Assembly: GCA_001179505.1 (NCBI GenBank)
Contig: CDMY01000272.1
Location: 1 to 63,947 of the forward strand
Direction: 5' to 3'
Length of the DNA stretch: 63,947 nucleotides
From: Vitrella brassicaformis CCMP3155
Taxonomy: Eukaryota > Protista > Chromerida
Shown: positions 3,873 to 29,400 of the stretch, one piece after another
How positions within the stretch are numbered: the first letter of the stretch is position 1
Layout: the number at the start of each line of letters is the position of its first letter
Made by a program: the position numbers and the translations under genes
Notes under the pieces: model-generated
The model's input: the letters and a program-made list of their open reading frames with translations, nothing else
What the model was told of the DNA's origin: nothing
The model's database searches: none

Positions 3873-6800
3873 CTATAATGGTGCTGGCAATGAGCACGAT
3901 TTGTCTTGGCTGCTCCAGCAACAGCCGCGAGATATACTGCAAGCAAGCATTCATTAGCTGATCAAGGAGAACTGTGTGTCATCTTGACTGACTGACCATT
4001 CTTGTGAGTCGATGCCCTTGTAGCCACATTCCTGCCTGTGTGTGTCGGACAGACACAGAGATAGACGCACATTCCATTCCGTGTGCCGTGCCCGGATGGA
4101 TCAGGTGTCTCTTCACTCACTCACTAACCGCTTGTTGCCCTTGTCCTTCATGTGCTTGCACGTGTCTGCCGCATGGAAGCACCACGGCACACCCGCCTCG
4201 CCAGTCTCGTGCCAACACGCACCCTAACCAATCGACACACACACACACAGATGGACGCGGCAACCAATTGAGGAGTTGGTTGAGGAGCTTCCACGCCAGC
4301 CACACAAGCAAGTACTTACTTACCTGGCCGAGGCATTCATTCTTCTGTATGCCGTCCCACCCCGCATCCACCTGGCCCTTCCCCGAACCACACCGGCCGT
4401 CATCACTCGTGCGGGGCCGAAAACACCACGGCACGTCTCTCTTTGTGCTGCCATCCGGTGGTCTGAAGCAGCAGCCGAGTTGGTGGCACTGCTGTTGTGT
4501 GACGAAGGGCGTGTCGCTGGCGCAGTCCTGTCTGTGTGAGTCGTCCGAGTGGCTGGTGCACATGGCGCCCATGCTGGAGCACCACGGTGAGAGCAGCGGT
4601 GGGCTGCTGTGGCTCTTGGAAGTCTTGTGGTGCTTTGTGACGGCCTCGACGCGGTAGTATACACAGCTGTTGATCGGCGAGTGCCTACAACATGCACACA
4701 AACAGGTACACAGACGGGGGAGGGCGTGTGTGTGTGTGTGTGTGTGTTGGGGGGGGGGTCGGGGAGTGTTGGTTTGCACACTGCACTGTACCTTGTATCT
4801 GCGAGTTCGAGAGAGTGCTCGAAGTGTTTCTTGGCAATGGTGTCGATGAGGTCCATGTCGTCGGGGTCCACCCCCCCATAGACCTACACACACAGCCACA
4901 GACACAGCCATGCACCCCTGGCTAGAATGGATATGGATGCAGTTAGTCTCACCTTCCACTCCTTGATGTGTGTGGCGCCGTTCCAGCTGAAGTGCAGTGA
5001 CGCCCTCTCGGCGTCCAACACCAGGTCTGGCAGCGACGACGGCGCACCCCACCAGTCGTACTTCATGGCGCGATACGCCATCCCTGCAGACACACACAGC
5101 GAGAGACAAAGAGAGAGAGAAAGACGCGCCTGTACAAGCCAGCCACATGGGTGGGTGCGTCGTGTTATATCGACCGGGGTTGATTGAGAGTTCCAGGACC
5201 TTCTCGCCCTTGCGTGTGACCTCAGTGTAGAAGGGGTGGCTGTCGGGCTCCACACCGGCGAAATTGACCACCATGTTGCCGTTATCCAGATACTGACAAA
5301 CACACACACACACACACTGTCCTGTATGTATCTGTCTCTCTCTTTCTCTCTGTGTGTGGTCATCCATCCCAGATCCCTACGTCGAATCCCCCCATGGCGA
5401 GTCCGTATCTGTCAGGATCATGTCGGTATTCCCATTTCCTCTTGGCGACCAGCTTCTTCTCGTCAATCTCGTACTCCACTGCACGCGACCTGTGTGCACA
5501 CACGCAACACAAGCGCCATACATACCCACACATCCGTCCGTCACAAATACATACACACACACCTACCATGGCGGGTCTCTGCCATTGCCGTTGTCGAACA
5601 GGGAGAGTCTGCCGTCCTCGTGCAGCCTGGAGTCGTGCTGCCACGAGGGGCCGGGATCCTTCCCATGGAACGTGAAGTCGCCGTCAGGACCACCTAGCTT
5701 CCACATGATGGCGCCCGTCTTTCTGTTGATTTTGATAACTTGTGAGAGGTGTCGGAGGGAGATCAGGACGTGGCCGTCGGGCGTCCAGCAGGCCGAGTTG
5801 ACGCTGAGACAGACAGAGAGGGAGAGAGGGAGGGAAACAGGTGGGTAGCCGGGTGAGCAGGTGAGGTTTGTCTGTCTACTGTAGGTGGTCGAAGAATCCC
5901 CCGTCTGGTTTGTTCTGGGACTTCTCCAAGCCGCCGTGAAGGTGGTCCTGATGAGGGAATGCACGGACGGACGGGCACACAGGGCATGGCACAGACATGG
6001 CAGAGGGCACAAACCTTCACGCACGCATCCCTTCTCCTCCCCTCTCACCCACGAGTTCCACTGCCACACCAGGTTGTCCTTATCATCCAGCTCCTGCACA
6101 CACCACACCCATTCCCTGCATCTGTATGTGCGTGCCTTCAGAGGGGGCGAGATAGCTAATAGCCCAGCCGACCTGTATGACGAATCCCATGACCTTGGTG
6201 TGTGGCGATCCCCCGCGCCACGTCATGTCCATGTTCTCACGGTAGTCGTACGCCAGCAGCAGCACCTGCACCGCACACAATACAGTGGAAGGAATGGATG
6301 CATGACACACACTGCACTCGTGTCGTGTGTGTGAGAGGTGGCTGACGTACATGGTCGTCTTTGCTCATCTGGAAGTCGTGGTCGTTTGTGATGTATCCGT
6401 TCTTGGGGAAGATGTGACGCACCTCCTCATACGAGTGGTCCAGCACAGACCAACCACCTTGACACACACACACATCCCTCCCTCCCTCCATCCATCCATC
6501 CCTCTGTGTGTGTGTGTGTGTGTGTGTATCGCAGAGAGGGAGAGGGAGAGGACACCCACCTCTGTCTGATACGTGTGAGAGCAGCCCGTTCTGCTGCATC
6601 TTGAAGTCTCGCGTCGACCAGCCGTGCCACTTCTCGTTGACGTGGGGGAAACGGTGGTACCTGCACACACACCAAGACACCCACACCACACACACCTCTC
6701 CATCGACGGTGGGTGCATCAGGTGTCTGTCTTTTGCTGACCAGACGGGCTCTCCATGCTCGTCGACGATAGACAGGTACTGATGCACCGATATCAGGGGG

Positions 6801-7856
6801 TCGCGCAACGGCGCGAAAATGATGACACTGCATGGCACGCACAGCGAGAGAAGCAAGCGCCTACGTAGGCACGGTCGGTCGCCATGCTCACCCACCCATC
6901 TGCTGTCTTGCCCTTGACGGGGGGCACGAGTACGTCGACAGCGGGGTAGTCGTCGGGCAGCGTCTTGTAGGCCTTGATGGCCCTCTTCTTGGCAGACGCT
7001 GTGGCGTTCTCCAGGAGAGACGACGAGTGAGCGGCTGGTATGGTAAATGGACAAGAGAATGATGAACAGACACATAGGCCCGGGTGCAGTGCGTGCAGCG
7101 TGACGCATGCACCTACTTACTTGGCCCTCGTCTGTCGTCATGGTGTGTGAACATCGACTCCCTCCAAAAAAAGGGCCGTATGTCGGTCTCGTCCTCCATC
7201 TCCTCTGCTGCTGCTGCCATCGTGACAGCCACACCTCTCCCTCCCGCGCCATTCCCACTGCCCAGGTGGGTCTCCATCATGTGCTCGATGTGCCGCCTTC
7301 TCTCGTTAGAGCTGGCGAAATCTCTCATGGCGCGGAAATAGTGCGCCGCTGTCCGTCTTGGCGCGATGGTGAACTGCCACCAGAAGCCGCCGAGCACCTC
7401 ATCATGATGCTCCTCTCCGTCTTCTCTCCATGGGGTTGTCGCGAGAGTGATGCCCTCCGGCACAGACACAGTCACCCGCTCGCCAGGGACAAAGGCGCCA
7501 TCAATGTCGAGCACAATCGTGAGGTTGTCGCGGCTGACGGCCATTGTGGCGTTCCTCGTCCCGCTGTCCTCTCCCTCTATCGCCACATGGACAGACTCGT
7601 TGACAACCTGTTGGTGCCTGTGCGCGTGATTATCGTTATGGTCGGGCCGCATGATAATGGAGGTGAACGGCGAGACGAAGGTTGCGTCTGGCAGGGGGTG
7701 GACGTAGGCGAAAGGGCCTGCGGCGGGGATGAGGGGGCTGCCGGGTGAGCACCGGAGGACGTCGCAGTCGACGTGGTGATCTTGGCTGCGGACAAGGGGC
7801 GGGATGAGGAGGGCTGTCATCGTCAAGAGCAGCGACCCTTCCCGAAGCTGTGGCAT
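3873..7856 (-). CDS. Secreted arylsulfotransferase (ASST-type beta-propeller) with N-terminal Ig-like region and three C-terminal trefoil (P-type) domains
   Basis: Signal peptide MPQLREGSLLLTMTALLIPPLVRS. Spliced ASST motifs: NDHDF, WQWNSWDH, FFDHLHVNSACWTPDGHVLISLRH, WQHDSR, FDNG, SRAVEYEID, YRAMKYDWWG, SWNGAT. Trefoil Cys patterns follow; stop TAG at 3873-3875. Confidence 0.85.
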
Positions 7857-11108: not shown

Positions 11109-14100
11109 TCACTCCAGGATGGGCAGCACGCCCCCTCCCACGTCCAGCCGGTGGAACACCAACCCGGAGCGATTATGCCCCGATGTCACGCACCCGCACG
11201 CCACTATATCCAACACCTCCAGCGGCTCCACCACGTTCTTCCGCTGCTTGCTCGGCAGCGACCTCGACCGCTCCCTCGAACCTTTCCTGTGCCGCTTGTC
11301 GGCCGCCCGCCTTTGCGCCCCAGCCGATGGCGGCAGCTGTGTGGATGTGCACGTTGATACGTCCCCGATGCTGATCGGTGAGGAGAGTTCGCTCGCCGAC
11401 ATGGAGCGGCAGACGGGGGAGCTGTGCGGGGCGGCGTGGTGGTGCGCCGGGGCGGGCGAGAGGCACTGCGAGTGCGCCTTCTTGACGTGCGGATGGTCGT
11501 GGTGCTGATGCTGCTGATGCTGCTGTTGTCGCTCGGGTGCCGCCATCTGCCTCATGAGCAGTGCTGGCGGGACGACAGATGGACAGCTGACCTCGGCGGC
11601 ACACACAGGGGGGTGCAGCAGGTTGCCCAGGGACTGCCCGTGCAGCCCATGCCCATGCATGCTGCCGTTGATGAATGGTGACGCGGGGGGCGTCGACTGT
11701 GCCGGCGGGGGGTAGAGCGACGACGGGCTTGCGAACGTCGATGGGGGCGAAGGGGGCGGCGAGTGCGGCGGGTGCAGCACCGGGTGGTGCCCGCCAGCCC
11801 CACTCACAGCAGACCGTTTGGTGGTTTCGCGTGAACAGGGGACTTCCCCTTTGTTGCCCGCTGCCCGATTTCTGCATGGGACGAGGTAGACGGACGCCAC
11901 CCAGGCCGTGAGCAGCAGCACCAACGCCAGCAGCAGGGACACCATGACTGTCAGCCACATGGGCTTGCCGTCCTCCTCCACGGCCATGTCGGTATCGGCC
12001 GATTTCTGCTCGCTGGTGGTGCCGGTTGAGAGGAGGGTGATGGCGTCTTGTTGCTGGCTCTGTTGCCGCGGTGGTGGTGTGTCTGCGGTGGCTGTGGGGG
12101 GGACTGGGCTGGTAAGCAGCGCGGGCATTTCGGACTGGTCTGGGATGGTGAGCCACTGCTGCATGAGGGTGGACATGTCGCTCTTGAAGTGCGACTCGAA
12201 CACCGACGGCTCCACTCTGCCGACCAACACGCACATCAATCACATCGTTGTGTGTATCGTCCTAATGCATCCCCATAAAAATCTATCCGTTGAGCTTACT
12301 CAAGGAAGAATTGCGTGCCTTGCTGTGACCTCGACTGCACCTCCATGACATCGATGGCTTCATGGGGGACACCCAGCACCCCTGCCGACCACCGCTGGAC
12401 GCCCTCGAGCACGTGTGACCGGTACCACAGATCCTGATGGCATGGCAGGCAGGCACGTGACATGACATGCAACACTTGCTTGTGGTGGTACTGACTGTGT
12501 GTGTGTACCTTACCTCGACAAGACGGCCGTAGGACACCTGCCGCACCCCAAGCGTCAGAAGCGCCACGTCCTTTTCATCATCATCCGTGCCAGTCGTCAC
12601 ATTGGTCACATTGGCGCTCGCGTCTCTCTCTGCCTTGTCTTCCTCGCTCTCGCGCAGCATGACGGGCGGATACGCCTCCCCATCCACAATCGACTGCTCC
12701 ACTGACGAGTTCTCATCTGATGGGGGGGCGGTGGACATGCTGTCATGCTCTGGCTCGTCTGTCGTTGTCGAAGTGGATGGCGACGAGTAGTCGGGGAGGG
12801 TGTCACTCTCCCACTCGTGTGTGTCCTTTTGGTCTGTGTCGTCGTCCTGGTGGTCCTCAGGTGGGGGAGGTGGTGGGGGCTTCTTTGGCTTGGGGGTCGG
12901 CTTGTGGTTGTGCTTGTCGTTGTGTTTGTTCTTGTGGTGGTGGTCCTTGTTGTCCTTGTTGTTCTGCCACCATTTCTTTCTCTGATAAGTGTTGCTGGCG
13001 CCTTTGCCTTTGCCTTTGCCGCTGCCCTGTCGCTTCTTGTCCTTGACGCAATACGCAGGCCCCGATATGCTCAGCAGCGCTCGCACGGCCACATCGTCGA
13101 TCCGCTTGTCCTTCCTCGCACCAGTGAACAGGTGACACTCACCCCCTGCCCCGCCCCCGCCCCCCTTGCCCTTGCTGTCGGCCCGTTTGCCGTCCCTCTC
13201 GCCCTTGTCGTCGGCCTTCAGGTGGAAGGAGAACGAGGAGCATGTTTCCTCGTGTTGGCAAAAGACTTGGCAGACCTCGGCGGAGGGGAGGGAGGAGACG
13301 GCCTTGACGGGCTCCAGGATGACCCTCTTGCCCAGCATGAAGCACCCCACCCACTTGGACCACACGATGGAGTCGTCTTTGGAGGAAGTGGCGGACGGAG
13401 AGGGGGGGTGCTGCTGGGCCTGGGCGTGGGCGTGGGCATGCGCCTGGGGGCGGGCCAAGGGGTGCTGCTGGTGGGGGTGTCTGTGGCTTTGTTTCTTCTT
13501 GCGAGTGTTGATGGCTTTGGTCTCGATGTTTTGTCGTTTCTCCTTGGCCATTCTGACGATGTGTGCCGTCTCCTTTGGCGGCACGACAGACCGGCCCACC
13601 CTTTTCCAGCCGTCGACGAACCGCTGCTGATTGTCTGCCTGCTCGCGCACTCCCGCCGCAAACTCACTCGACAACACATTCACCCAATGCTTCGCACCGT
13701 CATCGCTGCTGCTCAGCTCGCGATGTCGCGGTGAGGGTGGCCTCGCCCCCACTCGCAGAATGACGTCATTCGGTGGCTTGCTGTCGGGCAGTTGATGAGT
13801 GGCGATGGTCTCATTGTTGGCGTAGATGAGCAGAGAGTGCGGCTGCCACTCCACCCCCAGCACCAGTGACACCTCCACATCGCCACCCACGCCAGAGCTC
13901 GGCCCTTTCATCGCCACATCGACTCTCTTCATCTCTTCATTGGCTTCTCCCTTTTTCGTATCGACGGTTGATGTGACATCGATCGGCAGCACGTCTTTCC
14001 TCAGCCCAACCCTCGGCGTGGCCTCAACCGCCACGCCATCAGCTGTCGCTCTGCCGTCATCTGGCCGCTCCATTGTCATCAGGCGAAACAAGACGACTGG

Positions 14101-14529
14101 CGGGGTGGCAGTGATTGGCCTGTGCAGCAGGTAGGTGAAGTGGGTCTCGAACCTGCCGTAGTGGAAGCTCTGTTCGGCCTCCATCTGCCATGGCGACGAC
14201 GCTGACACGACCCCCTCTTCGCGCAATAACGATGAGATTTCGTTGCCCATCACCAGCAAAGGCGGCAGGACGATGCGCGTGACGTTGCCAGTGGACTGGA
14301 TGTAGGCCGGGGGGATGGCTGCTGCTGGTGTGTGTGCTGCTTTCCGGCTGAACCACAGGAAGTCGGTCACAAGACTCTCGTCGTCGGTTGTGGCCTCCCC
14401 GCCCGCCTCAGAGAGGAAGGCCTTCTCGATGACGACCGACAGGACCACCCCCAGCACGAGCAGCACCGTCGCCAACACCCCACAGAAGAACACCACGCTC
14501 TTCCGCCAATCCATAACCTCCATCGCCAT
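11109..14529 (-). CDS. Large membrane adhesin-like protein: N-terminal anchor, ConA/GH16-like domain, PAN/apple domain, SEA-like domain, TM, cytosolic tail
   Basis: The 748-aa and 376-aa ORFs join via a small exon DLWYRSHVLEG...TQFFL. Motifs: FHYGRFE...VEWQPHSLLIYAN; PAN-like SAEVCQVFCQHEETCSSFSF...CHLF...SGPAYC; TM WLTVMVSLLLALVLLLTAWVASVYLV. The 3' end is uncertain (possible donor GA|gtgagt near 11110). Confidence 0.7.
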
Positions 14530-14650
14530 TGACGGTCCTCCGCGTTGCTGCCGCCCGCTGCAGATTGAGCGTTTGTCCGTTCGGTTCGTGGAGCTTTCCG
14601 TTTATTTCGTCGGCCGTTGGGGAGCTTCGACCCAGGCTTCGACGAGCGAG

Positions 14651-22440: not shown

Positions 22441-24905
22441 ATGACTCTCGCCATGTTGATCTTTGCTGCACTGACAGAGGGCATCAGAGCCGTACAGAGA
22501 AGCGGCCGAGAGGGCTTCGCCTTCGGCCACGGGAGGAGGCCGCTGCTGCAGCCGCAGCATAGGGGAGGGAGGGGCGGGGGACCTCGTGTGGTGAGAAGTG
22601 CAGCAGCTGACGGCCAAGCCGTCGCAGTGGGGCCCGTGCAGACGACCGAGGCAGAGGTCAAGACACCCGCTGCAGCAGGGGTGAGAGTCACGAGGCAAGG
22701 CAGCACTCGAAATGCATGGGGACTGTTAAAGGTCTGCTACCTACTGTGTGTGCGTGGATCAGCGTCGCAGTGCGGCAGTGGTACAGACGGCTGGCGGCAC
22801 CAAGGAGAGCGGTGTGAAGGAGGCGCCGCTGGATCTGAACCCGCCGAGGGGCACGAGGGATTTCTTCCCTGACGACATGCGCCTGCGCAACTGGCTCTTC
22901 GACAAGGTTAGTTAAGCACATCGTTCGATCAACAATGCTGTGGGTCGGTCACGTATGCGTGGTGCTCTGTGCATTATTTGTCTGTCTATCAGTGGCGGCG
23001 GGCAAGTGAGCTGTACGGCTTTGAGGAGTTTGACGCGCCCGTGCTCGAGAGCGAAGACCTCTACATAAGAAAGGCTGGTGAGGAGGTTGTGGGTCAGCTG
23101 TACTGCTTTGCCGACAAGGGCGGGCGGCGAGTGGCGCTGCGGCCCGAACTCACACCCTCCCTCGCACGTATGGTGCTCGCCAAGAGGGGCCAGCTCAACA
23201 TGCCCATCAAGTGGTTCGCGATACCTCAATGCTGGCGGTCAGCTCCAGCCCCCCACCCACCCACCCACCCACCCACACACACAATTGGATGCAGTGTGTG
23301 CAGCCGATGCATCCGATGGCTCCCTCTCTCTCTGTGTGTCTCAACTTACTTTAAGTTATGAGCGGATGACCCGAGGTCGGCGTCGCGAGCACTACCAGTG
23401 GAATTGCGACATCTGGGGGGTGGGGGAGGTGACGGCCGAGATGGAGCTGCTCAGCTGCATTGTTCGCTTCTTCGAGAGCGTGGGAATCGGCAGCGATGAT
23501 GTGGGCATCAAGGTCAACAACAGAGAACTGCTCAGAGAAGTGCTGCACAAAAGTGAGGAGGGAGGGAGGGAGCGACAGACAGACAGAAAGAGAAATAAAT
23601 ACCCCCACCGCATCCACACACAAGGAAGGTGTGGACGTGGGTGGACTGATTATCTATCTGTGTGTGTCTTGTGGTCAGACGGCGTGCCCGACGACCGGTT
23701 TGCGGCCGTGTGTGTGTTGATTGACAAGCTGGAGAAGGTGCCCCTCGACCACCTGAGGGACGACTTCCGAGCGCTGGGGGTCGAGGGCAGCCAACTTGAC
23801 AGCATCGCCGCGAGTGTGCGGGCCGACCAGACCGTCGACGACGTCGCGCAACTCGTGGGGGAGGACAGCCAGGCCGTCAAACACCTCAGGTATGCCTGTC
23901 GGTATGTCGGTGGGTGGGGGAAAAGGCACGTGTGTGTATGTCCTTCTCTGTGTGGTGTGGTGTGGTGTGGTGTGTGCAGAGATGTGTTCGACATGGCTGA
24001 CGCATACGGGATTGCGGATTGGCTCGTGTTCGACCCCTCAGTGGTGAGTGGTTCTCCTAGTGGGACGGGACAACATGCACGCCTCATTGGTGCGTGTGTG
24101 TGTGTGCAGGTGCGTGGCTTGGCCTACTACACTGGCGTCGTCTTTGAGGGCTTCGACAGGGCGGGGGAGCTCAGGGCCATCTGCGGCGGTGGCAGATACG
24201 ACACGTACGCATGTCGACGGCTGAGTGCGCCAGGCAGCAAGCGACTCACAATGGATGGACGGACACTCGTCCATTCCTGCTGCCGTCTGTCTGTCCGTCA
24301 GGCTGCTTGAGATGTTCGGCGGCGAGCCCATCCCTGCCGTGGGCTTCGGCTTTGGGGACGCTGTCGTTGTGGAGCTGCTCAAAACAAAGTGACTTGACCA
24401 CATCGCCAACCACCCGTACATGCCATGCATCCCCCTTCCCTCACTGTCTCTGTTGTTGTCTCCCTCATCTCAGGGGCCTGCTGCCCGACTTCGCCGACAC
24501 CTCTGTGGCTGACGCAGTGGTGTGGCCGCTCGCCGGGGGCGATGAGACATCGACCGTGCAGCAGGCGGCCGGCAGGGTGGCGACACGACTTAGACAGAGC
24601 GGGCTCAAAACAGACGTCATCCTCGAAAACAAAAAGGTCCGCCACAGAGAGGGAGAGAGAGAGAGAAAGAAACAAACAAGAAGAGCCACCGACTGCTTGT
24701 CTGTCTTTTGTGTCAGTCCAAGTGGGTGTTCAAGCACGCTGCGCGCGTCAACGCCGGGGTGTTGGTGGTGATAGGTGCCGACGAGGTGGCGGGGAACGAG
24801 GTGACGGCCAAGCGGCTGTGCGACAAGGAGCAGCAGCGGGTGACCCTCGACGGGACACATCTGGAAGACCTAGCGGCCGAATGGGCGATGGGAGAGGGAG
24901 GGTAG
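22441..24905 (+). CDS. HARS: Histidyl-tRNA synthetase, bacterial/organellar type, with putative bipartite leader
   Basis: [71 protein letters not shown]-terminal hydrophobic stretch plus basic extension from ATG 22441. Confidence 0.95.
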
Positions 24906-26403: not shown

Positions 26404-29400
26404 CTAAGTGACCGTGGGCTTGTAGTCTGGGTTCTTGGTGAGGACCACCACGTGCTCCAGCACCGTTGTCTTCGACACGTCTGCAACACACACACCATAC
26501 ACACACACGAGTCACACACATCACATGACATGATGGATAAGGTTGGCCGCGTGCTCTGTTCGTCTGTCTGTCTGTCTGTTGCATCCCTCACATTCCTCGG
26601 TGGCCAGCTCCGCCCTGTCGTTGTACGACAGCACCACCGGGCTCTGGTGCGTCTGGAAGCCTGGACACATGGCATGGCACCAAACACACACCAAAAAACG
26701 CGCCAGAGGTCGATGCACCGAGAGATAAGTGTGTGAACGTCCTGTGACATGTGCGCCGCGCACCGGTGATAGATTTGGGTCTGCCGGCCTGTCCGACGAC
26801 ATCGACAGCCTGTCCGACCCGCACGGGCACCTGGAGGTGGTTGAGGTCCTCGTCCACCGTCAGCACCATGCGAGGCACTATTGCCGGCCCCAAGTGATAC
26901 AGCAAATACGGGAACCGGCTGCATGGTGGCGTTGATTGACAGACACACACATAGGCGCGCACACAGACATCCAGCAAGGTGGCGTGGTTGTGGTGTGGTT
27001 GTTGGATACCCACCCGAGGATGGTGTTCTTGAGTGACAGACAGGCGTGGAGGACCACCAAGAACGCACCTGCACACACGGAATGGTTGTGCTTCAGCTGA
27101 ACATTTCGGTGGCTAGTAGTGGCTAGCTGTCTGTGTCTGTGGTACCGTACCCAGGTTGACAGGGCTGTAAAGCAGCCGATCGGAGTGCAGCGGGTTGATC
27201 GTCACTAAACCCTACACACACAACAGACACACAGAGACCAACGATAGATCCACATCCCCAACACTAGAGTGCCTCCACGCCGCCCCCCCGCCACTCACCT
27301 TGCCCATGTAGAGCAGCCCCTGTGCTATCCTGACGATGAACAGCGCGTTGGCATCCTTTGCGTAGAAGGCCGCCAGCTGCCTCAGCAGCCCTGCGATGCG
27401 GCTGTTGTTGGTGCCAGCACCAACCAGACCCAGCGCAATGATGGCGTGCAAAGCCACATCCGCATCGGCGTCGTGCGACAGCTTGGACAGCGTATCTGAC
27501 CGCACGCACCAACCAGTTTAACACACAGATCAATCAACGGGGCTGTCGGAAGAAGGTGGTGGGTGTCGGTTGTGGGTGGTGCGGTTTGTACCAACAACGT
27601 TTGGCCTTGGATTGGATGCATTCTGCAACGCCATGGCAATGGGCACCTACACACACGACACATATAGACAGACAGGCGATATGATGAAGCGTCGAGGAGC
27701 AAGTGTGCAGCAGCACAGGTGAATGAATGACCGACTGACTGACCGCTCTCCTCAGGGGAATGTCGCCATACTGCAGAATGTGGTCCAAAGACCGAGCCGT
27801 CATCTCAAGACCTGACATACATGAAATGACAATCAATCCATGGCAACCTAACATATATGGCAATGCTCACTTACCGACGTCCTCCCCGAGAGCGATGAGT
27901 GGCACGGCGAGGACGGTGAGTGACTGCACGAGTGCCTCCTCCTCCTTGTCCTCCTCTGTGCGCTCCGCGCACTGATGCAGCATCTTCTGAATCTGAATGG
28001 AGGCAACACGGACAGGACAGACGTCAACAACCGGGGGCTGTTAGGCAGTCAGGCCTTGCTTGCCTTGCGTGGCTTAGGTTACCTGGAGCACGTTGCCCGA
28101 TCCTGCGTGAGCGCAGCTCTCCAATGTGAAGGACGCGTACTTGCCTGAGCATTGGTTGGAGTGCGGGAACAAACAGACGATGGCGTCGTCCTCTGTCCTC
28201 CCTCCTTTTCTTTGCCCGACTCACCCAGTGGTTTGTCGATCGCCTTGAGCATCTCAAGCGTCGTCTCCACCATGTGCGTCTCACCCTTACCTGAAAAACA
28301 CCAAACACATACATGCAACCACACACGTCGAAACACAGTGCCTCCCTCCCTCCCTCCCGCCCCTCTCTCTCTGTCAACTCAGCCCCTCCTACCCTACCGA
28401 GGAAGAGCAGCCCCAGTGCGACAGCAGTGAAGATGGCTGGCCCATTGCAGGCCTTGTCAGCGTTGGCCTGGTCCATCAGTGCCTGCACCAGCGACTCCAC
28501 CAGGTCGCCGTCCTCAGAGCCAAGGAAGACCAGCCCCAGGCTGAGTGCGGCCATGGCGCAGGGCTCCACGCCAAACGACCCGTCGAGCAGCACCGGGCTC
28601 AGCGCCTCACGCAAATCCTCTCGACGCGTGCCCGCGTAGGCATAACCCAGACTGACATGTATTATCACAGATGACACATGACAGACAGACGGGGCATAGC
28701 CTTGCGGATGGGGTGGCCGACAGTGGTGTCTCTTTCTCTCACCCGACGGCAGCTCCCAGCCTTTCGAGAGCCACGTTGCTGAGCTGCAAATGTACACAAT
28801 CGGTCGATGGACAGACAGCAGCGGGGTAGGTGGGTGGGTGTCAGTGAGTGTGGGCCACTCTGTGACACTCACCAAGTGTTCCTGGATGAGTCCCAGCGCT
28901 GGATCGACCTCGTGACGCACACCAGCATTGGTCAGACCTGATTGATTCATGAGGACAGGTAGGTGGATGGATGCGCGCATCGGATTCGCATAATGAATGG
29001 GTGAGTGTGTGGAGTGACAGACAGACAGGCGGACTGTCCAGACTGACCGATGGCCATCCACGCACCCGCCTTGACGTGTGGGTCGCTGCTGTAGGTGTAC
29101 TTGTCCACCGCACTCAGACCCTCATCGATGTTCCACATGTACAGCATCCCTGACCCAACCATGCCATGGCAGCCACATCAATCATTAAAGAAACAAATGG
29201 GTCGGTGGGGCTTTGCTCCCACCATTGTGTGTGTGTTCATTTTTCTGCCCGTGTGGTGTGTCCTTCATTCCTTACCGATGGACGCCACTGCGGCCGTCAT
29301 GCCGTGGTCCTTGTTCTTGTACAGCCAACCCGAATCTGACCATACCACACACACACACACACACACAAAATCGGCCGTGCCGTGCAGGAAATGCCGCGGT

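What the first reader, a model, noticed from the sequence alone, without database searches (positions are those of the whole stretch)
3873..7856. Secreted arylsulfotransferase fused to three trefoil domains
Seen: after the ASST propeller, small exons assemble three P-type repeats: CTSHSDDSHRQDCASDTPFVTQQQCHQLGCCFRPP...VPWCF; CGSGKGQVDAGWDGIQKNECLGQGACWHETGEAGVPWCF; CKHMKDKGNKRQECGYKGIDSQECISRGCCWSSQDKSC. Known: ASSTs are PAPS-independent sulfotransferases mostly from bacteria and fungi; trefoils are glycan/mucin-binding modules best known in animals. I do not recognise this combination. Inference: an extracellular enzyme tethered to glycans that sulfates or desulfates wall or host polymers.
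Basis: partly seen in the sequence, partly recalled or inferred. Interest (0 to 1): 0.78.

Follow-up and report, generated by a model that had tools for sequence, protein, structure and literature searches.

The report
Algal sulfotransferase with trefoil tail
This is a real, intron-rich gene of the coral-associated alga Vitrella brassicaformis. It encodes a probably secreted, bacterial-type (PAPS-independent, Cpz4-like) sulfotransferase ending in two clear and one degenerate trefoil modules, a fusion I found only in this alga, in about six sister genes, with untested chemistry.

Summary
On the minus strand, 7856..3873, 17 GT-AG exons encode an N-terminal signal-like segment, a bacterial Ig-like domain, an ASST six-bladed propeller with its C-terminal sandwich, and then cysteine-rich trefoil repeats.

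The genome is Vitrella brassicaformis CCMP3155. The public model of this gene (CEL98505.1, 844 aa, named "P-type domain-containing protein") already carries ASST plus two trefoils.

The third repeat depends on two tiny exons. These are conserved, with their splice sites and low pN relative to pS, in the closest sister gene, whose public model includes them.

The fusion needs no splicing assumption. The end of the ASST sandwich, trefoil 1 and half of trefoil 2 lie in one exon.

All five active-site residues of E. coli ASST that I checked are present (H381, H459, N461, R476, H515). The closest solved structure is Cpz4.

At least five, probably six, Vitrella genes share the architecture. I found it in no other organism and in no paper. 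This scan had already flagged the same fusion on other pieces of this genome.

Glycan-directed sulfation is a reasonable inference but is untested. Verdict: a lineage-specific new variant of a known enzyme kind, of moderate interest.

The parts
3873..7856 (-). Whole coding region: 17 exons, ATG at 7856, TAG at 3875-3873. Exons (high-low): 7856-7121, 7034-6896, 6827-6741, 6660-6560, 6457-6351, 6265-6173, 6093-6049, 5947-5880, 5803-5567, 5489-5381, 5292-5175, 5083-4953, 4883-4792, 4684-4324, 4223-4129, 4035-3997, 3936-3873.
   Evidence: all introns GT-AG, frame kept; exons 1-15 match the public model P0165 = CEL98505.1, which sets the donors of exons 3 and 11.
7785..7856 (-). N-terminal signal-peptide-like segment (about residues 1-24, hydrophobic core at residues 7-18).
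   Evidence: Kyte-Doolittle 12-mer maximum of 2.05, no other hydrophobic 19-mer. Sister proteins P0018, P0026, P0025 and Piridium P0166 have similar leaders. No dedicated signal-peptide predictor was available.
7362..7721 (-). Ig-like beta-sandwich domain (residues about 46-165), of the bacterial Big_5/SbsA type. It is followed by a poorly conserved linker with low model confidence (residues about 169-258).
   Evidence: pLDDT above 90 with strands only; aligns collinearly with residues 49-151 of P0003, where Pfam finds Big_5 at 51-146. Pfam itself finds nothing on exon 1.
4953..7034 (-). ASST six-bladed beta-propeller (exons 2-12, residues about 270-625). The start of the C-terminal beta-sandwich also lies in exon 12.
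   Evidence: PF05935 3.2e-28, PF14269 2.6e-22. Cpz4 9kf4 at E=1e-40 over residues 276-687. Foldseek TM 0.80-0.83 normalised on Cpz4.
6378..6380 (-). His381 codon, the equivalent of E. coli ASST His252.
   Evidence: Invariant in 122 aligned sequences. Mapped to 3elq numbering.
5797..5799 (-). Asn461 codon (equivalent of Asn358). The neighbouring His459 (equivalent of His356) is the codon split across the exon 8/9 junction (5881-5880 + 5803).
5752..5754 (-). Arg476 codon (equivalent of Arg374).
5635..5637 (-). His515 codon, the equivalent of His436. In E. coli ASST this residue is transiently sulfated.
   Evidence: Invariant. The Q-H pair aligns to Q435-H436 of 3elq. Its role is described in PMC13426309.
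4561..4883 (-). Rest of the C-terminal beta-sandwich of the ASST unit (exon 13 and the first third of exon 14, to residue about 705), plus a short linker.
   Evidence: aligned to Cpz4 up to residue 687; the profile aligns to Cpz4 residue 467; strands to residue 704.
4420..4560 (-). Trefoil 1 (C730-F776), six cysteines, entirely within exon 14.
   Evidence: Pfam Trefoil 3e-10. PDB TFF1/TFF2 matches. The ligand-contacting Asp (D741) and Trp (W774) are kept, compared with PMC7221086.
4176..4392 (-). Trefoil 2 (C786-F824), split by intron 14 (4323-4224). Cys2 and Cys4 are both replaced by Ala, which removes one disulfide pair.
   Evidence: second Trefoil stretch. The sister gene on contig C729 has the same repeat without the intron. 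D794 and W822 are kept.
3894..4160 (-). Trefoil 3, degenerate (C830 to the last Cys), spread over the end of exon 15, exon 16 (4035-3997) and exon 17 (3936-3873). It has six cysteines, a short third loop, no PWCF, and Glu in place of Asp/Asn.
   Evidence: GT-AG, in frame; exon 17 gives Trefoil at E=0.012; exons and splice sites are conserved against C729 while the introns are not; pS 0.48-0.49 against pN 0.10-0.19. The sister protein P0164 gives 3 Trefoil stretches. This repeat is absent from the public model P0165.

Best explanation
Shown here:
- The locus is one spliced nuclear gene of Vitrella brassicaformis (public model CEL98505.1 / A0A0G4EM37).
- Its product is collinear from end to end with bacterial-type PAPS-independent aryl-sulfate sulfotransferases: Ig-like domain, six-bladed propeller, C-terminal sandwich.
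- To this, the alga's lineage has added a C-terminal tail of trefoil (P-type) modules.
- It keeps His, His, Asn, Arg and the nucleophilic His of the ASST active site.
- Its closest solved relative is Cpz4.

Inferred mechanism:
- After entering the secretory pathway via its N-terminal leader, the enzyme works by the ASST ping-pong route.
- An aryl sulfate donor sulfates His515, and the sulfuryl group is then passed to a hydroxyl of an acceptor.
- Trefoils 1 and 2 keep the Asp and Trp that contact sugar in human TFFs. They would act as small lectin modules that hold the enzyme on a glycan surface, such as the alga's own wall or mucilage or a neighbouring surface, so that the acceptor is most likely a sugar or glycoconjugate hydroxyl. 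Cpz4 also acts on a sugar hydroxyl.
- The gene belongs to a large Vitrella expansion of a bacterial-like ASST lineage shared with Piridium. About six members carry the trefoil tail.
For: Gene and fusion:
- 17 GT-AG exons keep the frame.
- Exons 1-15 are identical to the public model P0165.
- The last strands of the ASST sandwich, trefoil 1 and half of trefoil 2 lie in the single exon 14.
- The same ASST-then-trefoil order occurs on contigs C729, C395, C336 and C534, and probably C791. Intron positions differ, and C395 has three trefoils in one terminal exon.
- Purifying selection against the C729 sister gene: dN/dS of 0.12 for the ASST part and 0.19 for the tail with trefoils.

Enzyme:
- Pfam ASST hits.
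- Cpz4 9kf4 at E=1e-40 and Foldseek TM 0.80-0.83; E. coli ASST comes next.
- H381, N461, R476 and H515 are invariant and H459 is kept in at least 90% of 122 sequences. They map to H252, N358, R374, H436 and H356 of 3elq. The roles of these residues are given in PMC13426309.
- Cpz4 prefers sugar hydroxyls.

Trefoils:
- Pfam and PDB matches to TFF1/2/3 and the GAA trefoil.
- The TFF lectin residues are the Asp/Asn before Cys2 and the Trp of PWCF (PMC7221086). Both are present in repeats 1 and 2.
- In repeat 2, Cys2 and Cys4 are lost together. In the canonical trefoil connectivity (my knowledge) they form one disulfide, as expected for a folded domain.

Secretion: N-terminal hydrophobic leader, no other membrane segment, 16 cysteines.

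Lineage: nine Vitrella proteins and one Piridium protein form a clade with 100% local support among unnamed metagenomic, bacterial-looking ASSTs.
Against:
- The public model ends after trefoil 2.
- No activity, donor, acceptor or location is known for any eukaryotic member.
- The trefoil part of the model has low confidence (pLDDT 41-70).
- Classic ASSTs act on small phenols, so a glycan acceptor is only an analogy with Cpz4 and with the lectin role of animal trefoils.
- No signal-peptide predictor was run.
- The taxonomy of the outgroup sequences is not known; it is guessed only from their domains.
Confidence: 0.6

Rival explanations
1. The enzyme and the fusion are as described, but the substrates are small phenolic or secondary metabolites, as for classic bacterial ASSTs. 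The trefoil tail would only retain or stabilise the protein in the wall or mucilage, or mediate oligomerisation, and would not select a glycan acceptor.
For: Most characterised ASSTs transfer sulfate between phenols. The genome has type III polyketide synthase genes and PAPS-dependent sulfotransferases that could make phenolic sulfates. The trefoils lie about 25 residues beyond the catalytic unit, on a low-confidence linker.
Against: The nearest solved relative, Cpz4, sulfates a sugar hydroxyl. Earlier notes of this scan report trefoils of this genome on carbohydrate-active or wall proteins. I checked this only as far as a PAN neighbour and a FAS1-like neighbour.
Confidence: 0.25
2. The public model is right about the 3' end: the mRNA retains intron 15, and the protein stops after trefoil 2 (844 aa). 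The third repeat would be a decaying remnant.
For: P0165 ends by reading through the exon 15 donor into a stop. Repeat 3 lacks PWCF and both lectin residues. Exons 16 and 17 are tiny (39 and 64 nt).
Against: Exons 16-17 and their GT/AG sites are conserved against the C729 gene, while the flanking introns differ in length and sequence. pS exceeds pN in both exons (but only 11 and 17 codons). The C729 public model P0164 and an independent JGI-derived ORF P0002 both run through the equivalent exons. All six cysteines are kept.
Confidence: 0.3
3. The propeller is a catalytically dead binding module (a pseudoenzyme), and the protein is a structural or adhesive wall protein.
For: The family is greatly expanded in this genome (at least 30 loci), and expansions often include inactive members. 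No activity data exist.
Against: All five active-site residues checked are intact in this copy. The ASST part has the lowest dN/dS (0.12).
Confidence: 0.05
4. It is an artefact: bacterial contamination, mis-assembly, or two genes wrongly merged.
For: The closest relatives outside chrompodellids look bacterial.
Against: There are sixteen spliceosomal introns with GT-AG ends. CA/TG microsatellites of the kind found in this gene's introns also appear in the sister loci. Sister genes lie on many large contigs. The ASST end and trefoil 1 share one exon. A homologue exists in the Piridium transcriptome.
Confidence: 0.02

Closest known systems
Cpz4, the ASST-type sulfotransferase of caprazamycin biosynthesis (Streptomyces sp. 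MK730-62F2; PDB 9KF4/9KF6)
   Same: It is the best sequence and fold match: E=1e-40, 26% identity, TM 0.80-0.83 on the Cpz4 length. The propeller plus C-terminal sandwich are the same, and the His/Asn/Arg/His active-site columns are the same. It is PAPS-independent.
   Different: Cpz4 is a 472-aa bacterial biosynthetic enzyme. It aligns only from residue 276 of the Vitrella protein, so it has no counterpart of the N-terminal Ig-like domain and no trefoils. Its donor (sulfated triketide pyrones made by Cpz6/Cpz8) and its acceptor are known. For the Vitrella protein neither is known.
E. coli CFT073 periplasmic aryl-sulfate sulfotransferase AssT (PDB 3ELQ; Pfam PF05935)
   Same: It has an N-terminal beta-sandwich plus a six-bladed propeller and is exported. 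H252, H356, N358, R374 and H436 align to H381, H459, N461, R476 and H515.
   Different: Only about 14-15% identity. It depends on the DsbL/DsbI system for one disulfide, has no trefoil tail, and acts on small phenols.
Animal trefoil factor peptides (TFF1-3) and the P-type domain of GH31 alpha-glucosidases
   Same: The repeats share the six-cysteine pattern, the GCC[FWY] core and PWCF. The ligand-contacting Asp/Asn and Trp are present in repeats 1 and 2. As in GH31 enzymes, the trefoil is an accessory module on an enzyme that may act on sugars.
   Different: The repeats sit at the C-terminus of a sulfotransferase in an alveolate alga. Repeat 2 has lost the Cys2 and Cys4 pair. Repeat 3 lacks the third-loop motif. 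No ligand is known.
Vitrella sister genes CEM31604.1 (C729), CEM09679.1 (C395) and CEM03206.1 (C336)
   Same: Same architecture: Ig-like domain, ASST, three trefoils. Identity to CEM31604.1 is 63%.
   Different: Intron positions, linker lengths and the cysteine content of repeat 2 differ. The C395 copy has all three trefoils in one exon, and the third is a full PWCY-type trefoil.

Membership tests
PAPS-independent aryl-sulfate sulfotransferase (ASST; Pfam PF05935 / PF14269) | Significant match to the family profiles above the curated cut-offs | tested here: met
   P0165: PF05935 at 99.3 bits (cut-off 24.2) and PF14269 at 80 bits (cut-off 27). Exon 9 alone scores 52.6 bits.
PAPS-independent aryl-sulfate sulfotransferase (ASST; Pfam PF05935 / PF14269) | Six-bladed beta-propeller fold like the solved ASSTs | tested here: met
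   AlphaFold model with pLDDT above 90 over residues 270-705. Foldseek top hits are Cpz4 (TM 0.80-0.83), then E. coli ASST.
PAPS-independent aryl-sulfate sulfotransferase (ASST; Pfam PF05935 / PF14269) | Nucleophilic histidine (EcAST His436) and the sulfuryl-binding His252, His356, Asn358 and Arg374 | tested here: met
   H515, H381, H459, N461 and R476. Thr501 was not mapped.
PAPS-independent aryl-sulfate sulfotransferase (ASST; Pfam PF05935 / PF14269) | Sulfuryl transfer from aryl sulfates (pNPS, MUS) without PAPS | not testable with these tools
   This needs an enzyme assay.
Trefoil / P-type domain (Pfam PF00088) | Profile match above the cut-off | tested here: met
   Repeat 1 scores 40.3 bits on exon 14. 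P0165 scores 58.6 bits with 2 stretches. Repeat 3 was assessed only in pieces: exon 17 gives E=0.012. In the sister protein P0164, all 3 stretches pass.
Trefoil / P-type domain (Pfam PF00088) | Six cysteines in the 1-5, 2-4, 3-6 pattern | tested here: inconclusive
   Repeats 1 and 3 have six cysteines. Repeat 2 has four, having lost Cys2 and Cys4 together. Disulfide pairing itself cannot be tested here.
Trefoil / P-type domain (Pfam PF00088) | Lectin residues of TFFs (Asp/Asn before Cys2; Trp of PWCF) | tested here: met
   Met in repeats 1 (D741, W774) and 2 (D794, W822). Not met in repeat 3 (Glu, no Trp)..
Trefoil / P-type domain (Pfam PF00088) | Glycan binding | not testable with these tools
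   This needs a glycan array or a binding assay.

The most novel reading that the evidence does not exclude
Vitrella runs an extracellular, PAPS-independent glycan-sulfation system. Lectin-targeted ASSTs would sulfate wall or mucilage polysaccharides outside the Golgi. They would use phenolic sulfate donors made by the alga's own type III polyketide synthases and PAPS-dependent sulfotransferases, which would be a eukaryotic counterpart of the Cpz6/Cpz8/Cpz4 two-step relay.
Probability: 0.1. Interest if true: 0.8.

Novelty: new variant of a known kind. Interest (0 to 1): 0.48.

Why it matters
Carbohydrate sulfation in eukaryotes is generally taken to depend on PAPS and to occur in the Golgi.

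Here, a free-living relative of apicomplexan parasites has a large family of bacterial-type, PAPS-independent sulfotransferases. Several of them carry lectin-like tails. This offers a testable candidate for sulfation of glycans after secretion.

It is also a clear example of a bacterial-like enzyme being domesticated: it has gained introns, expanded into a family and fused with a module best known from animal mucus.

For trefoil biology, it adds non-animal trefoils that keep the sugar-contacting residues.

For biocatalysis, Cpz4-like ASSTs that act on sugar hydroxyls are sought after.

Tried and rejected
- **Transcript evidence:** P0001 is a 150-aa ORF, 96% identical over exon 9, with a different intron.
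- **Metagenome scans:** two scans of metagenome contigs, with exon 14 and with P0002, found nothing. Records of this genome may be excluded there.
- **Word-index searches:** these reach only a short way. P0018 gave 15 hits, P0164 gave 6, and the trefoil tail of P0165 found only itself. The claim 'only in Vitrella' therefore rests mainly on the 150 best of 3810 ASST representatives, of which only three Vitrella proteins carry trefoil motifs. It is not exhaustive.
- **ESM Atlas:** the search with the tail gave only generic trefoil clusters (GH31, GH15, ZP) at TM below 0.4.
- **N-terminal domain:** Pfam found nothing on exon 1. Its Ig-like nature comes from the model and from alignment to bacterial Big_5-bearing relatives.
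- **My first gene model:** I used later donors for exons 3 and 11, giving 901 aa. I rejected these in favour of the public donors after comparison with the sister gene and the bacterial consensus.
- **Tree building:** the maximum-likelihood mixture tree did not finish in time, so a FastTree tree was used.
- **Joined model:** I sent no joined spliced model to any tool. Searches were made exon by exon by reference, or with the public protein ids. A search or fold of the 873-aa form that includes exons 16-17 was therefore left out.
- **Unrelated paper:** the paper that mentions both Vitrella and sulfotransferases (PMC11677658) concerns PAPS-dependent PF00685 enzymes, not this family.
Full report
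**What is in the sequence**

On the minus strand between 7856 and 3873, the three reading frames hold a chain of stop-free pieces. With GT-AG introns of 35-107 nt, these join into 17 exons with an unbroken frame. Several of the introns carry CA/TG microsatellites.
- Repeat 1 lies inside exon 14.
- Repeat 2 spans exons 14/15.
- Repeat 3 spans exons 15/16/17.

Scanned exon by exon, by reference, Pfam gives:
- ASST on exon 9 alone: PF14269 at 6e-14 and PF05935 at 4.6e-9.
- Trefoil at 3e-10 on exon 14.
- Trefoil at 7e-4 on the exon 15 half of repeat 2.
- Trefoil at 0.012 on the 20 residues of exon 17.

**Whose gene it is**

The window is contig C272 of a 72.7-Mb, 1064-contig assembly. A search of 1.84 billion representative proteins with exon 9, followed by two word-index searches, led to named records of Vitrella brassicaformis CCMP3155.

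P0165 is this gene's public model. It is CEL98505.1 / UniRef100_A0A0G4EM37, 844 aa, named "P-type domain-containing protein", on a contig of 140,612 nt. My exons 1, 2, 4-10 and 12-15 are found in it letter for letter. It differs from my first model in three places:
- It uses earlier donors for exon 3 (6741) and exon 11 (5175). I accept both, because the sister gene's model and the bacterial consensus agree with them.
- It reads through the donor of exon 15 into a stop. It therefore ends after trefoil 2 and lacks exons 16-17.

On P0165, Pfam gives PF05935 at 3.2e-28, PF14269 at 2.6e-22 and Trefoil at 5.3e-16 in two stretches.

I sent no joined spliced model to any tool. Searches used single exons by reference or public protein ids. 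The 873-aa form with exons 16-17 was therefore neither searched nor folded.

**Is the fusion real?**

It needs no splicing assumption. Exon 14 (4684-4324) contains all of the following:
- the last strands of the ASST C-terminal sandwich, which align to Cpz4 and to bacterial relatives up to about residue 700;
- a short linker;
- all of trefoil 1;
- the first half of trefoil 2.

The same order, ASST then trefoils on one strand within 1-2 kb, recurs on contigs C729, C395, C336 and C534, and more weakly on C791. The intron positions differ between copies. C729 has no intron inside trefoil 2. C395 has all three trefoils in one terminal exon ending in a stop. The public models of these sister genes (P0164, P0018, P0026) each give ASST plus three Trefoil stretches.

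Against the closest sister gene (63% identity), synonymous sites are close to saturation and non-synonymous change is low. dN/dS is 0.12 for the ASST exons and 0.19 for the tail with the trefoils.

**The third repeat**

Exons 16 (39 nt) and 17 (64 nt) are absent from this gene's public model.

In favour of them:
- Their GT and AG sites, and the exons themselves, are conserved against C729, while the introns differ in length and sequence. The first 26 nt of exon 17 are identical.
- pS is 0.49 and 0.48 against pN of 0.19 and 0.10, although on only 11 and 17 codons.
- The C729 public model and an independent JGI-derived ORF (P0002, 445 aa) both run through the equivalent exons.

Against them:
- The repeat is degenerate. 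It keeps six cysteines but has a short third loop, no PWCF, and Glu where TFFs have Asp or Asn.

I rate inclusion of exons 16-17 at about 0.7.

**The enzyme part**

P0165 aligns with the solved Cpz4 (9kf4) at E=1e-40 over residues 276-687, and with E. coli ASST more weakly.

An alignment of 122 relatives has four invariant columns: H381, N461, R476 and H515. H459 is kept in at least 90% of the sequences. A profile of that alignment, matched to 3elq, places these residues on His252, Asn358, Arg374, His436 and His356. A 2026 review lists exactly these as the sulfuryl-binding residues and the transiently sulfated histidine of E. coli ASST (PMC13426309).

An AlphaFold model of P0165 (mean pLDDT 79) gives these confidences:
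- above 90 over the Ig-like domain, the propeller and the sandwich;
- 41-70 over the trefoils;
- below 50 over the leader and the 193-258 linker.

Foldseek ranks Cpz4 first (TM 0.80-0.83 on its length, 26% identity), then E. coli ASST.

The N-terminal domain, on which Pfam is silent, aligns collinearly with the Big_5 Ig-like domain of a 1453-aa metagenomic relative.

According to the review, Cpz4 prefers the hydroxyl of a sugar moiety over phenolic hydroxyls. Its donor is a phenolic sulfate made by a type III polyketide synthase and a PAPS-dependent sulfotransferase (PMC4257720, citing Tang et al. 2013).

**The trefoils**

Exon 14 matches porcine spasmolytic polypeptide across two consecutive trefoils. 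It also matches TFF1, TFF3 and the trefoil of lysosomal alpha-glucosidase.

In human TFFs only two side chains touch the sugar ligand: the Asp or Asn just before Cys2, and the Trp of PWCF (PMC7221086). Repeat 1 has D741 and W774. Repeat 2 has D794 and W822. Repeat 3 has neither.

In repeat 2, Cys2 and Cys4 are both Ala, here and in the C729 copy, while C395 keeps both. In the canonical 1-5, 2-4, 3-6 connectivity (my knowledge of the family), these two form one disulfide. Their joint loss is what a folded domain would tolerate.

**Context in the genome and beyond**

The genome holds at least 30 ASST-like loci and at least 18 Trefoil matches at about 11 loci. Trefoils also occur away from ASSTs:
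- next to a PAN domain on C414;
- after a fasciclin-like stretch on C542 (by eye only; Pfam found only the Trefoil there);
- in a multi-trefoil open frame on C249.

Earlier notes of this scan report trefoils on expansin-, GH13- and GH16-type genes of the same genome. I did not re-test those.

In a FastTree tree of 97 ASST cores, nine Vitrella proteins and one from Piridium sociabile form a clade with 100% local support, nested among unnamed metagenomic sequences. Those sequences carry bacterial features such as Big_5 and T9SS sorting tails. The four trefoil-bearing proteins fall in one subclade (97% local support) together with two Vitrella proteins that lack trefoils. The order inside that subclade is unresolved, so one origin of the fusion is neither shown nor excluded.

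Of the 150 closest ASST representatives worldwide, only three carry a trefoil motif, and all three are from Vitrella. Full-text searches for Vitrella with trefoil, arylsulfotransferase with trefoil, and Vitrella with sulfotransferase found no paper on this protein.

**How it most likely works**

Shown:
- the architecture;
- an intact catalytic set;
- purifying selection;
- a leader-like N-terminus with no other membrane segment.

Inferred:
- The protein enters the secretory route.
- His515 takes the sulfuryl group from an aryl sulfate and passes it to a hydroxyl of an acceptor.
- Trefoils 1-2 hold the enzyme on a glycan, so the acceptor is probably a sugar of the wall, the mucilage or another surface.

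The genome also has PAPS-dependent sulfotransferase genes and three tandem type III polyketide synthase genes. The parts for a Cpz-like donor relay therefore exist, but nothing links them to this gene.

The main rival is that the substrates are small phenolics and the tail only retains the enzyme. A pseudoenzyme or an artefact is unlikely.

**Novelty and verdict**

The domain pair is already visible in public automatic annotation. This scan has also flagged the same fusion on other pieces of this genome (s1-226951; s1-233300). It is not in the literature I could search, and I found it in no other organism, with the limits on that search stated above.

It is a lineage-specific new variant of a known enzyme kind, of moderate interest. 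It would rise sharply if glycan sulfation outside the PAPS/Golgi route were shown.

Noticed in passing
G000 contig C1041: 113-541, 2971-3384, 4260-4682 (+): There are three tandem type III polyketide synthase (Chal_sti_synt_N) matches, E about 1e-30, in long open frames without stops. Together with at least five PF00685 sulfotransferase loci, these are the parts of a Cpz6/Cpz8-like donor pathway. I did not check whether C1041 is algal or a contaminant.
   Followed up: no
G000, whole genome: ASST-like sequences are greatly expanded: 30 PF14269 and 36 PF05935 matches on about 30 contigs, some with in-frame stops that suggest pseudogenes. C729 holds two ASST genes on opposite strands, tail to tail.
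   Followed up: partly
L031 (C414) 5334-6174 (-); L036 (C542) 4798-5580 (+); L033 (C249) 4850-7180 (-): Trefoil modules also occur away from ASSTs. One is next to a PAN domain, one follows a fasciclin-like stretch (by eye; Pfam found only the Trefoil), and several lie in a 576-aa open frame. The trefoil looks like a widely reused module in this genome.
   Followed up: partly
P0001 (ENA contig of 6239 nt; not fetched): This 150-aa ORF is 96% identical to exon 9, but its intron-derived flank differs by indels. It may come from another Vitrella strain, a close relative or an allele in an environmental data set, and it would be useful for testing exon conservation.
   Followed up: no
P0166 (EukProt EP00745, Piridium sociabile): The parasite Piridium has a 684-aa ASST homologue with a leader-like N-terminus and no trefoil. 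It groups with the Vitrella proteins. The enzyme therefore probably predates the split of the two lineages, with the trefoil tail added later or lost in Piridium.
   Followed up: partly
window 12286-14601 (-); 23069-24307 (+); 28027-29121 (-): Neighbouring open frames carry a PAN domain (9.8e-6), a histidyl-tRNA synthetase piece and proteasome/cyclosome repeats. Nothing suggests a functional link with the ASST gene.
   Followed up: no
window 4236-4249, 4727-4746, 5301-5316, 6463-6474, 6505-6526: Several introns of this gene carry (CA)n or (TG)n microsatellites. The same feature shows up as THTHTH or CVCVCV strings in translated frames of the sister loci.
   Followed up: no
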